DNA of 64,000 nucleotides from Octopus sinensis (GCF_006345805.1 NC_043015.1:32054001-32118000); one strand, 5' to 3'; positions 51,907 through 51,954 are shown, counted from the first letter of the stretch. Numbers and translations: made by a program. Notes: generated by a model not told the origin, from the letters alone.

Positions 51907-51954
51907 CATTTCAGTACCGGTTTCGGTCATTTTGAGACCTTTTCAACTGTAACG
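51907..51954 (-). ncRNA. Minimal type-I hammerhead ribozyme with U3-A8 covariant core
   Basis: Minus strand CGTTACAG-TTGAAAA-GGTC TCAAAAT GACC-GAAA-C CG G-TA-CTGAAATG. Stem I 7/8 pairs, stem II 4 bp closed by G10.1-C11.1, palindromic ACCGGT stem III, GUA cleavage triplet. Confidence 0.7.

What the first reader, a model, noticed from the sequence alone, without database searches (positions are those of the whole stretch)
51907..51954. U3-A8 hammerhead ribozyme in sense orientation within the probable 3'UTR of the membrane-protein gene
Seen: minus-strand CGTTACAG-UUGAAAA-GGUC(7-nt loop)GACC-GAAA-C-CG-G-UA-CUGAAAUG. Every hammerhead core position is present, with C3 and G8 jointly replaced by U3 and A8. 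It lies 703 nt downstream of the gene's TGA on the same strand. By eye there is no AATAAA or ATTAAA on the minus strand between the stop and the motif; the first ATTAAA signals are at 51623-51618 and 51549-51544. Knowledge: positions 3 and 8 form a Watson-Crick pair in the active fold, so the double change is compensatory. Minimal Penelope-type hammerheads have palindromic stem III (here ACCGGU) and cleave mainly as dimers. Inference: a retroelement-derived ribozyme is probably carried in this mRNA and could cut off the poly(A) tail, possibly only when two transcripts (or a retrozyme RNA) pair. That would be a concentration- or trans-dependent mRNA switch.
Basis: partly seen in the sequence, partly recalled or inferred. 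Interest (0 to 1): 0.75.

Follow-up and report, generated by a model that had tools for sequence, protein, structure and literature searches.

The report
Retroelement-derived hammerhead ribozyme relic near octopus gene
A complete hammerhead-ribozyme motif really sits 703 nt downstream of an Octopus sinensis membrane-protein gene, but it is most likely the leftover end of a Penelope-like or retrozyme-type jumping element, not an evolved switch on the mRNA.

Summary
The minus strand at 51954-51907 reads CGUUACAG-UUGAAAA-GGUC(UCAAAAU)GACC-GAAA-CCGG-UA|CUGAAAUG. This is a type I hammerhead with every core position present, U3-A8 in place of C3-G8, G10.1-C11.1, and helix III reduced to A-U plus a palindromic CCGG. 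A general descriptor found only this site in the window and none in 400 dinucleotide shuffles. Rfam HH9 matches below threshold (20.9 bits against 52).

The motif is retroelement-derived. A second, decayed copy at 59771-59800(+) has the same U3-A8 core, compensatory changes at three of four helix II pairs, the same ACCGGUA and a homologous tail. Both copies abut (TA)n. That copy also carries an inverted truncated partner, as Penelope-like insertions often do.

U3-A8 in such hammerheads was published in 2014, so this is a new member of a known kind.

The mRNA-switch reading is not supported:
- 3'UTR membership cannot be shown.
- The O. bimaculoides orthologue has AATAAA 223 and 252 nt after its stop, and alignment with it ends 108 nt after the stop.
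- No partner copy lies on this strand.
- The predicted homodimer Kd is 4-35 µM.
- The hammerhead fold loses out once flanking sequence is included.
- Published hammerheads of this build are inactive as monomers.

The parts
51907..51954 (-). Type I hammerhead motif. Helix I is 51954-51947 paired with 51914-51907. The core U3UGAAA8A9 is 51946-51940. Helix II is 51939-51936 paired with 51928-51925, with loop 2 at 51935-51929. G12A13A14A15.1 is 51924-51921, palindromic CCGG is 51920-51917, and U16.1 and A17 are 51916-51915. The predicted scissile bond is 51915|51914.
   Evidence: Sequence read. Pair table. MFE fold equals helix I plus helix II. Rfam HH9 20.9 bits, below threshold. Unique in the window and 0 of 400 shuffles.
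51836..51906 (-). 3' tail of the element carrying the hammerhead: ...AAATTATTTTAGCATTTTCT...CAACTCGTGT.... It is homologous to the tail of the second copy.
   Evidence: blastn 51842-51897 against 59636-59691: 59 nt, 79.7% identity, E about 1e-6. Local alignment score 53, reached by 0 of 500 shuffles.
51723..51826 (.). (AT)52 microsatellite directly abutting the 3' end of the element; the probable integration target.
   Evidence: Tandem Repeats Finder. A (TA)n insertion bias of some PLE clades is described in PMC8557442.
59763..59808 (+). Second, decayed hammerhead-like copy: AAUAUCUU-UUGAUAA-GCAU(AACAA)AUGC-GCAA-CCGG-UA-AAAAGAAC. It has U3-A8 again. Helix II is 4 of 4 paired, with three pairs changed on both sides relative to the first copy. 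A13 is mutated to C. Helix I has only 4 of 8 pairs.
   Evidence: Sequence. Pair table. Not detected by any Rfam hammerhead model at E<=10.
59620..59885 (+). Element holding the second copy. An inverted, 5'-truncated tail-only copy (arm 59648-59723, extending to about 59622) sits next to a direct copy (centre 59724-59808 plus arm 59809-59884). (TA)n lies on both sides.
   Evidence: Inverted repeat of 76 nt, 95% complementary. Sequence. Tail homology to the 51.9-kb copy.
52657..53289 (-). Last coding exon and stop codon (TGA 52659-52657) of LOC115222213, an uncharacterised multi-pass membrane protein of Octopus sinensis. Its other coding exons are 55620-55474 and 53611-53507.
   Evidence: 100% match to P0001. 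Translation. No Pfam domain.
52107..52417 (+). 5'-truncated 3' end of a CR1/jockey-like LINE, antisense to the gene, lying between the stop codon and the hammerhead. It is context only and not part of the hammerhead element.
   Evidence: Copies at 54720-55036, 30980-31222 and 48883-49074 at 87-89% identity. The intron copy at 54720-55036 overlaps a 114-aa ORF (55204-54863, minus strand) that matches O. vulgaris proteins, one of which is named as jockey-like RT.
51544..51623 (-). The first two canonical poly(A) signals (ATTAAA at 51623-51618 and 51549-51544) downstream of the stop codon. Both lie beyond the hammerhead.
   Evidence: Regex scan.

Best explanation
The motif is the ribozyme of a solitary, 5'-truncated copy of a hammerhead-bearing retroelement. 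The carrier is the 3'-terminal (pseudo-LTR-like) part of a Penelope-like element or of its non-autonomous 'non-LTR retrozyme' derivatives. It integrated next to a (TA)n microsatellite about 0.7 kb downstream of the stop codon of LOC115222213 in the Octopus sinensis lineage.

In the parent element, the type I hammerhead has helix III reduced to A15.1-U16.1 plus a palindromic CCGG. That build is made to work when two copies pair through ACCGGU:ACCGGU, for example in tandem or multimeric element transcripts, and so to process the element's own RNA. U3-A8 is a trait of this element family, not a local innovation.

At this locus the ribozyme is a single copy with an intact core. It has no partner on the same strand, no recognisable loop-loop clamp and a competing local hairpin. 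It is therefore expected to be silent or nearly so, even if it is transcribed as part of a long 3'UTR. It is a neutral insertion, not a regulatory device.

Shown here: the motif itself, its non-random nature, the related second copy and the insertion architecture.

Inferred: the class of the carrier element, the timing of the insertion and the lack of activity.
For: 1. The core and helices are complete, and the motif is non-random. The sub-threshold but specific HH9 match also shares non-core stretches: CGUUAC 5' of helix I, the CAAAA loop 2 and GAAACC...GGU.

2. A second copy at 59763-59808(+) has the same U3-A8 and the same ACCGGUA. G10.1-C11.1 is kept. The other three helix II pairs are changed on both sides with pairing preserved. 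Its tail is homologous. A relaxed descriptor gives only about one comparable background hit in about 190 kb of octopus DNA searched on both strands.

3. Both copies end in (TA)n. The second has an adjacent inverted 5'-truncated copy. The first has no such arm. Differing breakpoints, inverted truncated partners and microsatellite targeting are the published PLE insertion signature (PMC8557442).

4. Published precedents cover each feature. U3-A8 covariation occurs in PLE hammerheads (about 1,300 in S. mansoni), and palindromic 15.2-16.2/loop 3 and conserved G10.1-C11.1 are family hallmarks (PMC4209133). A helix III of one base pair plus a palindromic tetraloop occurs in amphibian retrozyme hammerheads that need dimers (PMC7229834). 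Retrozymes are described as PLE derivatives, with 0.24-0.32% of copies in exons, mostly 3'UTRs (bioRxiv 10.64898/2026.07.22.740005).

5. The region is lineage-specific. Alignment with the O. bimaculoides orthologous locus stops 108 nt after the stop codon, and nothing downstream is collinear.

6. The second copy has decayed (A13C, broken helix I), so inserted copies are not under purifying selection.
Against: - No Penelope-like ORF (RT plus GIY-YIG) was found in the window. The only RT (56850-58109) is an APE-type LINE. The carrier class therefore rests on architecture and literature, not on a linked autonomous element.
- Only two copies were found in about 190 kb of octopus DNA (window, L001, L123-L126). 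Copy number and consensus are unknown.
- The 5' boundary of the 51.9-kb copy is undefined. No empty site could be shown in O. bimaculoides because the whole flank is unalignable.
- The motif lacks two traits of the published PLE 'min-HHR': an unpaired base between positions 9 and 10.1, and a 6-8 bp helix II. It looks more like the canonical retrozyme type.
- Inactivity is predicted, not measured. The core at this locus is intact.
Confidence: 0.75

Rival explanations
1. The ribozyme is carried in the 3'UTR of LOC115222213 mRNA and cuts off the poly(A) tail when two transcripts, or the transcript and a retrozyme RNA, pair through ACCGGU. This would give a concentration-dependent or trans-dependent mRNA switch.
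For: The orientation is sense, and there is no AATAAA or ATTAAA between the stop codon and the motif. The core is intact with GUA|C. The predicted lowest-energy homodimer is the double hammerhead with a 6-bp intermolecular helix III. Two precedents exist: the Clec2 3'UTR hammerhead (PMC6765202) and retrozyme copies in Xenopus 3'UTRs.
Against: - 3'UTR membership is unverified. There is no UTR annotation or transcript contig.
- The orthologue has AATAAA at +223 and +252, and no homology extends to the motif.
- Predicted Kd is 35 uM at 37 C and 4 uM at 18 C. mRNA is present at pM-nM, which is my estimate. The expected dimer fraction is below about 1e-4.
- No same-strand partner lies within the transcript.
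- The hammerhead fold is disfavoured in context, with a competing ACCG-AAAC-CGGU hairpin.
- Single PLE hammerheads are inactive and dimers are weak in vitro (PMC4209133).
- The sister copy has decayed.
Confidence: 0.06
2. The carrier is not a Penelope-like or retrozyme retroelement. It is a short DNA-transposon-like element (MITE) with terminal inverted repeats that targets TA, and the hammerhead-like centre is incidental cargo.
For: The 59.6-59.9 kb copy is about 265 bp, has 76-nt inverted arms and is flanked by TA repeats. No PLE ORF is nearby.
Against: The 51.9-kb copy has only one arm. There is no significant inverted arm upstream (121 of 500 shuffles score as well). The arms of the other copy have unequal outer ends. 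Together these fit variable 5' truncation, not fixed TIRs. A complete hammerhead with compensatory helix II changes between copies is expected of PLE or retrozyme RNAs. To my knowledge, no MITE with a hammerhead has been described.
Confidence: 0.1
3. A chance match in AT-rich sequence; there is no ribozyme ancestry.
For: The U3-A8 core TTGAAAA and GAAA are low-complexity strings in an AT-rich region. The Rfam score is far below threshold, and its E-value scales to about 1.5 for the whole window across all families. The z-score of the fold is only -0.61.
Against: There were 0 descriptor hits in 400 shuffled windows. A second related copy shares the same variant core, ACCGGUA and tail. The match to HH9 extends outside the core.
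Confidence: 0.03

Closest known systems
Hammerheads of metazoan non-LTR retrozymes and amphibian satellite repeats (e.g. axolotl HHR_Amex1, newt satellite 2; Rfam Hammerhead_HH9-like type I motifs)
   Same: Type I topology. Helix II of 4 bp with G10.1-C11.1. An A-rich loop 2 (UCAAAAU against the HH9 consensus CAAAAA). Helix III of a single A-U pair capped by a palindromic tetraloop, which implies dimer-dependent cleavage. AT-rich carrier sequence.
   Different: U3-A8 instead of C3-G8. Helix I is a near-continuous 8-bp stem rather than 6 bp plus the internal loop that docks on loop 2. It is a single copy, not a 170-400 nt tandem array. It scores 31 bits below the Rfam gathering score.
Minimal hammerheads in the pseudo-LTRs of Penelope-like elements (Cervera & de la Pena 2014)
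   Same: The U3-A8 covariant is documented there. Shared features are palindromic 15.2-16.2/loop 3, conserved G10.1-C11.1, occurrence mostly as dispersed single motifs from truncated elements, high sequence variability with compensatory changes between copies, and a dimer requirement. The insertion architecture matches PLEs.
   Different: There is no unpaired base between A9 and G10.1. Helix II is 4 bp rather than 6-8 bp, and helix I is longer than the 4-5 bp typical there. No RT/GIY-YIG ORF or pLTR pair is present at or near the locus.
Discontinuous hammerhead in the 3'UTR of rodent Clec2 mRNAs (Martick et al. 2008, as summarised in PMC6765202)
   Same: A hammerhead lying between a stop codon and the first canonical poly(A) signal, in the sense orientation.
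   Different: The Clec2 ribozyme folds within one transcript into a full three-helix hammerhead. It is reported to cleave in vitro (PMC6765202) and is found in several mammalian Clec2 and Clec-like genes. Here helix III is missing in cis, conservation is absent in O. bimaculoides, and neither transcript inclusion nor activity is known.

Membership tests
Hammerhead ribozyme, type I | Conserved catalytic core: C3(U3) U4 G5 A6 N7 G8(A8) A9; G12 A13 A14; A15.1-U16.1; H17 | tested here: met
   UUGAAAA ... GAAA ... U A. Positions 3 and 8 are jointly changed to U and A, which keeps the Watson-Crick pair. That pair is established by Martick & Scott 2006 and others, as cited in PMC3884650.
Hammerhead ribozyme, type I | Helices I and II flank the core, with G10.1-C11.1 | tested here: met
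   Helix I forms 7 of 8 pairs and helix II 4 of 4. Both form in the MFE fold of the isolated 61-mer, with probabilities of 0.68-0.96.
Hammerhead ribozyme, type I | Helix III closes the three-way junction | tested here: inconclusive
   In cis there is only A15.1-U16.1 plus CCGG, and no stable hairpin is predicted. A 6-bp intermolecular ACCGGU helix forms in the predicted homodimer.
Hammerhead ribozyme, type I | Reaches the curated Rfam gathering score of a hammerhead family | tested here: not met
   Best match is HH9 at 20.9 bits against 52. Nothing is reported at gathering threshold.
Hammerhead ribozyme, type I | Site-specific self-cleavage after H17 | not testable with these tools
   This needs in vitro transcription and cleavage assays.
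Penelope-like element pLTR hammerhead | Located in a terminal repeat flanking an RT + GIY-YIG ORF | tested here: not met
   Among the ten longest non-low-complexity ORFs of the window (the only ones scanned), the sole RT is 56850-58109. It is an APE-type LINE whose relatives carry PF03372 and PF14529. Most genomic PLE hammerheads are likewise solitary (PMC4209133), so this does not exclude PLE origin.
Penelope-like element pLTR hammerhead | Member of a multicopy family whose copies show compensatory changes | tested here: met
   Two copies only. Three of four helix II pairs are changed on both sides, and the tail is shared. This is weak because n=2.
Penelope-like element pLTR hammerhead | PLE insertion architecture: 5' truncation, an adjacent inverted truncated copy, a microsatellite target | tested here: met
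   (AT)52 abuts copy 1. Copy 2 has (TA)n on both sides and a 76-nt inverted arm. Breakpoints differ between the copies.
Penelope-like element pLTR hammerhead | min-HHR traits: an unpaired base between positions 9 and 10.1, and a long (6-8 bp) helix II | tested here: not met
   A9 is followed directly by G10.1, and helix II is 4 bp.
Metazoan non-LTR retrozyme | Tandem repeats of about 170-400 nt, each with a type I hammerhead | tested here: not met
   No tandem unit lies around the motif, and no second same-strand copy exists in the window. Solitary monomers are nevertheless common in Xenopus.
Metazoan non-LTR retrozyme | [quoted passage not shown] | not testable with these tools
   No transcript data were reachable.
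mRNA-embedded 3'UTR hammerhead (Clec2 type) | Lies within the mature transcript between the stop codon and the poly(A) site | tested here: inconclusive
   At sequence level, no canonical signal precedes it. No UTR annotation or transcript evidence exists.
mRNA-embedded 3'UTR hammerhead (Clec2 type) | Conserved in orthologous genes | tested here: not met
   O. bimaculoides locus L001 has no counterpart. Alignment ends 108 nt after the stop codon.

The most novel reading that the evidence does not exclude
The single intact hammerhead is transcribed within a long 3'UTR. It is cut only when it heterodimerises, through ACCGGU, with abundant hammerhead-bearing retrozyme or PLE RNAs of the same family. 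Retroelement RNA levels would then be coupled to the stability of a host membrane-protein mRNA. This would be a trans-activated, TE-sensing ribozyme switch.
Probability: 0.04. Interest if true: 0.75.

Novelty: new member of a known kind. Interest (0 to 1): 0.25.

Why it matters
As it stands, this is a routine piece of genome annotation. It shows that Octopus sinensis carries hammerhead-bearing retroelement remnants of the Penelope-like or retrozyme kind. It also shows that the U3-A8 covariant core, described in flatworm PLEs, occurs in a cephalopod family. In the literature I could search, no paper describes cephalopod hammerheads.

It would matter more if the motif proved to be inside the mature mRNA and cleavable. 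It would then be a second natural example, after Clec2, of a hammerhead controlling a eukaryotic mRNA through its 3'UTR, and the first to depend on RNA-RNA dimerisation. The evidence gathered here makes that unlikely.

Tried and rejected
1. Scan of viral contigs for the ribozyme pattern: 0 hits.

All were chance AT-rich matches, and none had the hammerhead or the CTCGTGT tail. This was a poor choice of pattern and a dead end.

3. Hypothesis that the RT ORF at 56850-58109 is the parent Penelope-like element: rejected. It is an APE-type LINE.

4. Hypothesis that the repeat at 52417-52107 and the hammerhead form one element: rejected. The repeat is an antisense LINE 3' end whose other copies end before the hammerhead segment.

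5. Search for more family copies in O. bimaculoides (L001), further O. sinensis DNA (L123) and O. vulgaris (L124-L126): none found.

6. Search for an empty site or a syntenic anchor downstream of the stop codon in O. bimaculoides: only dispersed repeats align.

7. MITE reading: tested by looking for an inverted arm upstream of the 51.9-kb copy. The result was not significant.

8. Whole-window Rfam scan at E<=10: swamped by microsatellite-driven miRNA false positives. The hammerhead hit falls below the 150 rows listed.

9. MAFFT could not align the two short ribozymes correctly. A hand-segmented comparison was scripted instead.

10. Lunse et al. 2017 and Przybilski & Hammann 2007 are not held in the library. 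The supplements of Craig et al. 2021 are not held either.

Full report
**Origin of the window**

The last coding exon next to the finding translates to a protein 100% identical to 'uncharacterized protein LOC115222213 [Octopus sinensis]'. The locus look-up places the window on CM016877.1 at about 32.054-32.118 Mb.

The gene lies on the minus strand. Its coding exons are at 55620-55474, 53611-53507 and 53289-52660, and the TGA stop is at 52659-52657. The protein has no Pfam domain. It belongs to a mollusc-wide family of uncharacterised proteins.

**The observation**

The minus strand at 51954-51907 reads CGTTACAG TTGAAAA GGTC TCAAAAT GACC GAAA CCGG TA CTGAAATG. In hammerhead numbering the parts are:
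- helix I: 7 of 8 pairs, with one A.A mismatch
- core: U3 U4 G5 A6 A7 A8 A9
- helix II: four pairs, opening with G10.1-C11.1
- loop 2: seven nucleotides
- G12 A13 A14 and A15.1
- a palindromic CCGG
- U16.1 and A17

The scissile bond lies between 51915 and 51914. The isolated 61-mer folds into exactly helices I and II.

I wrote a general descriptor for type I hammerheads with a small palindromic helix III. It found only this site in the window, and none in 400 dinucleotide-preserving shuffles searched on both strands.

Rfam's curated models do not accept the motif. Nothing is reported at gathering threshold. The best match is Hammerhead_HH9 at 20.9 bits against a threshold of 52. That alignment is still informative, because similarity extends outside the core: CGUUAC 5' of helix I, the CAAAA loop 2, and GAAACC...GGU. 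The score is lost on U3 and A8, a shortened helix I and the missing loop 3.

**A second copy and the carrier element**

A self-comparison of the window showed that the 60 nt following the motif resemble 59636-59691. The blastn E-value is about 1e-6. A local alignment scores 53, which 0 of 500 shuffles reach.

Reading that place on the plus strand shows AAUAUCUU-UUGAUAA-GCAU(AACAA)AUGC-GCAA-CCGG-UA. Compared with the first copy:
- U3-A8 is present again.
- G10.1-C11.1 is retained.
- The other three helix II pairs are changed on both sides with pairing kept.
- ACCGGUA is identical.
- A13 is mutated to C, and helix I is largely broken.

Rfam sees nothing hammerhead-like there, so this copy is a decayed relic.

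A relaxed descriptor gives only about one comparable background hit in about 190 kb of octopus DNA searched on both strands. Finding this one directly upstream of a homologous tail is therefore not chance.

The second copy sits in a 265-bp block with (TA)n on both sides. It consists of an inverted, tail-only copy joined to a direct copy; the arms are 76 nt and 95% complementary. The first copy abuts (AT)52 at its 3' end. It has no significant inverted arm upstream. The two insertions therefore have different 5' breakpoints.

Four features match what is published for Penelope-like elements: high 5' truncation, adjacent inverted truncated copies, microsatellite targets and a hammerhead near the 3' end (PMC8557442). 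Animal 'non-LTR retrozymes' are now described as non-autonomous derivatives of PLE termini (bioRxiv 10.64898/2026.07.22.740005).

I could not find the autonomous parent:
- The only RT found among the window's ORFs that I scanned (56850-58109) is an APE-type LINE.
- The repeat between the stop codon and the motif (52417-52107) is the 3' end of a CR1/jockey-like LINE in antisense orientation.
- No further family copies occur in the other octopus DNA I could reach: 24 kb of O. bimaculoides, 22 kb more of O. sinensis and 41 kb of O. vulgaris.

**What is already known**

- Cervera and de la Pena (PMC4209133) described U3-A8 covariation in PLE hammerheads, with about 1,300 motifs in Schistosoma mansoni.
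- The same paper lists conserved G10.1-C11.1 and palindromic 15.2-16.2/loop 3 as family hallmarks.
- It found most motifs as solitary remnants of truncated elements.
- It reported no detectable cleavage for a single motif, and only weak cleavage for dimers.
- The axolotl HHR_Amex1 and newt satellite hammerheads have the same helix III, one pair plus a palindromic tetraloop, and cleave efficiently only as dimers (PMC7229834).

The present motif is closer to this canonical retrozyme type (4-bp helix II, no bulged base after A9) than to the PLE min-HHR in the strict sense.

In Xenopus, 0.24-0.32% of retrozyme copies overlap exons, mostly in 3'UTRs. A copy near or in a 3'UTR is therefore rare but not unprecedented.

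**Is it in the 3'UTR, and would it cut?**

Nothing available shows where the transcript ends. The gene record is CDS-only, and no transcript contig carries the protein.

The O. bimaculoides orthologue aligns at 81-93% nucleotide identity through exons and introns. Alignment stops 108 nt after the stop codon, inside a microsatellite. That species has AATAAA 223 and 252 nt after its stop, and no counterpart of those sites exists in the O. sinensis window. Beyond that point only dispersed repeats match. The whole 3' flank is therefore lineage-specific transposon sequence. The absence of a canonical signal before the motif in O. sinensis is suggestive, but no more than that.

On activity:
- There is no second same-strand copy to dimerise with in cis.
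- The predicted lowest-energy homodimer is indeed the double hammerhead. However, the ensemble dimerisation free energy is only -6.3 kcal/mol at 37 C (Kd about 35 uM) and -7.2 kcal/mol at 18 C (Kd about 4 uM).
- A typical mRNA is present at pM to low nM; this figure is my estimate. The predicted Kd is thus far above mRNA concentrations.
- With 141-501 nt of natural context, helix I probability falls to 0.01-0.27. A competing ACCG-AAAC-CGGU hairpin sequesters G12-A14.
- Helix I is a near-continuous stem without the internal loop that docks on loop 2 in HH9-type ribozymes. Fast cleavage at physiological Mg2+ is therefore not expected; this is an inference.

These are predictions, not measurements. 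Together with the published inactivity of single motifs and the decay of the sister copy, they make a regulatory role unlikely.

**Verdict**

The 'mRNA switch' part is not.

The motif is best filed as a new member of a known kind. It is apparently the first described for a cephalopod in the literature I could search: a solitary remnant of a PLE- or retrozyme-type element.

The residual novel reading is trans-activation by abundant family RNAs. I give it about 4%.

Noticed in passing
window 59620-59885 (+), core at 59771-59800: A second hammerhead-like relic (U3-A8, A13C, ACCGGUA) lies inside a 265-bp block with 76-nt inverted arms, embedded in (TA)n. It is upstream of the gene and on the opposite strand.
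   Followed up: yes
window 52081-52156: A near-perfect hairpin with arms of about 30 bp, followed by T7 on the minus strand, lies at the inner end of the LINE fragment. It gives sub-threshold miRNA-like Rfam hits (mir-1805, 31 bits against 64). It is probably an inverted duplication created on LINE insertion.
   Followed up: partly
window 52107-52417, 54720-55036, 30980-31222, 48883-49074: Four copies, 87-89% identical, of the 3' end of a CR1/jockey-like LINE. One lies in the gene's intron and one, antisense, just after its stop codon. The intron copy overlaps a 114-aa ORF that matches O. vulgaris proteins, one of which is named as jockey-like RT.
   Followed up: partly
window 56850-58109 (+): A 420-aa open frame of an APE-type LINE reverse transcriptase (RVT_1 at residues 284-405). 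It breaks off in an A-rich run, 1.2 kb upstream of the gene's start codon.
   Followed up: partly
window 5658-5739 (+): tRNA-Ser(AGA) with a long variable arm, scoring 59 bits. It is the only Rfam match above threshold in the window.
   Followed up: no
window 52521-52637 and L001 13855-13955: A compound (TG)n/(TA)n microsatellite directly after the stop codon is shared by O. sinensis and O. bimaculoides. It marks the point where the two genomes stop aligning. It may be a hotspot for insertions.
   Followed up: partly
L123 10001-16879 (record CM016877.1 32122796-32129674): The paralogue LOC115222212 (64% identical over the last exon) lies head-to-head with this gene, about 13 kb from its start codon and just outside the window. 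The family is conserved across molluscs and has no Pfam domain.
   Followed up: no
whole window, e.g. 34236-34318, 16351-16608, 52540-52637: Dozens of sub-threshold Rfam 'miRNA' hits (mir-297, mir-466, mir-3149 and others) coincide with (TA)n/(CA)n microsatellites. They look like low-complexity false positives.
   Followed up: no
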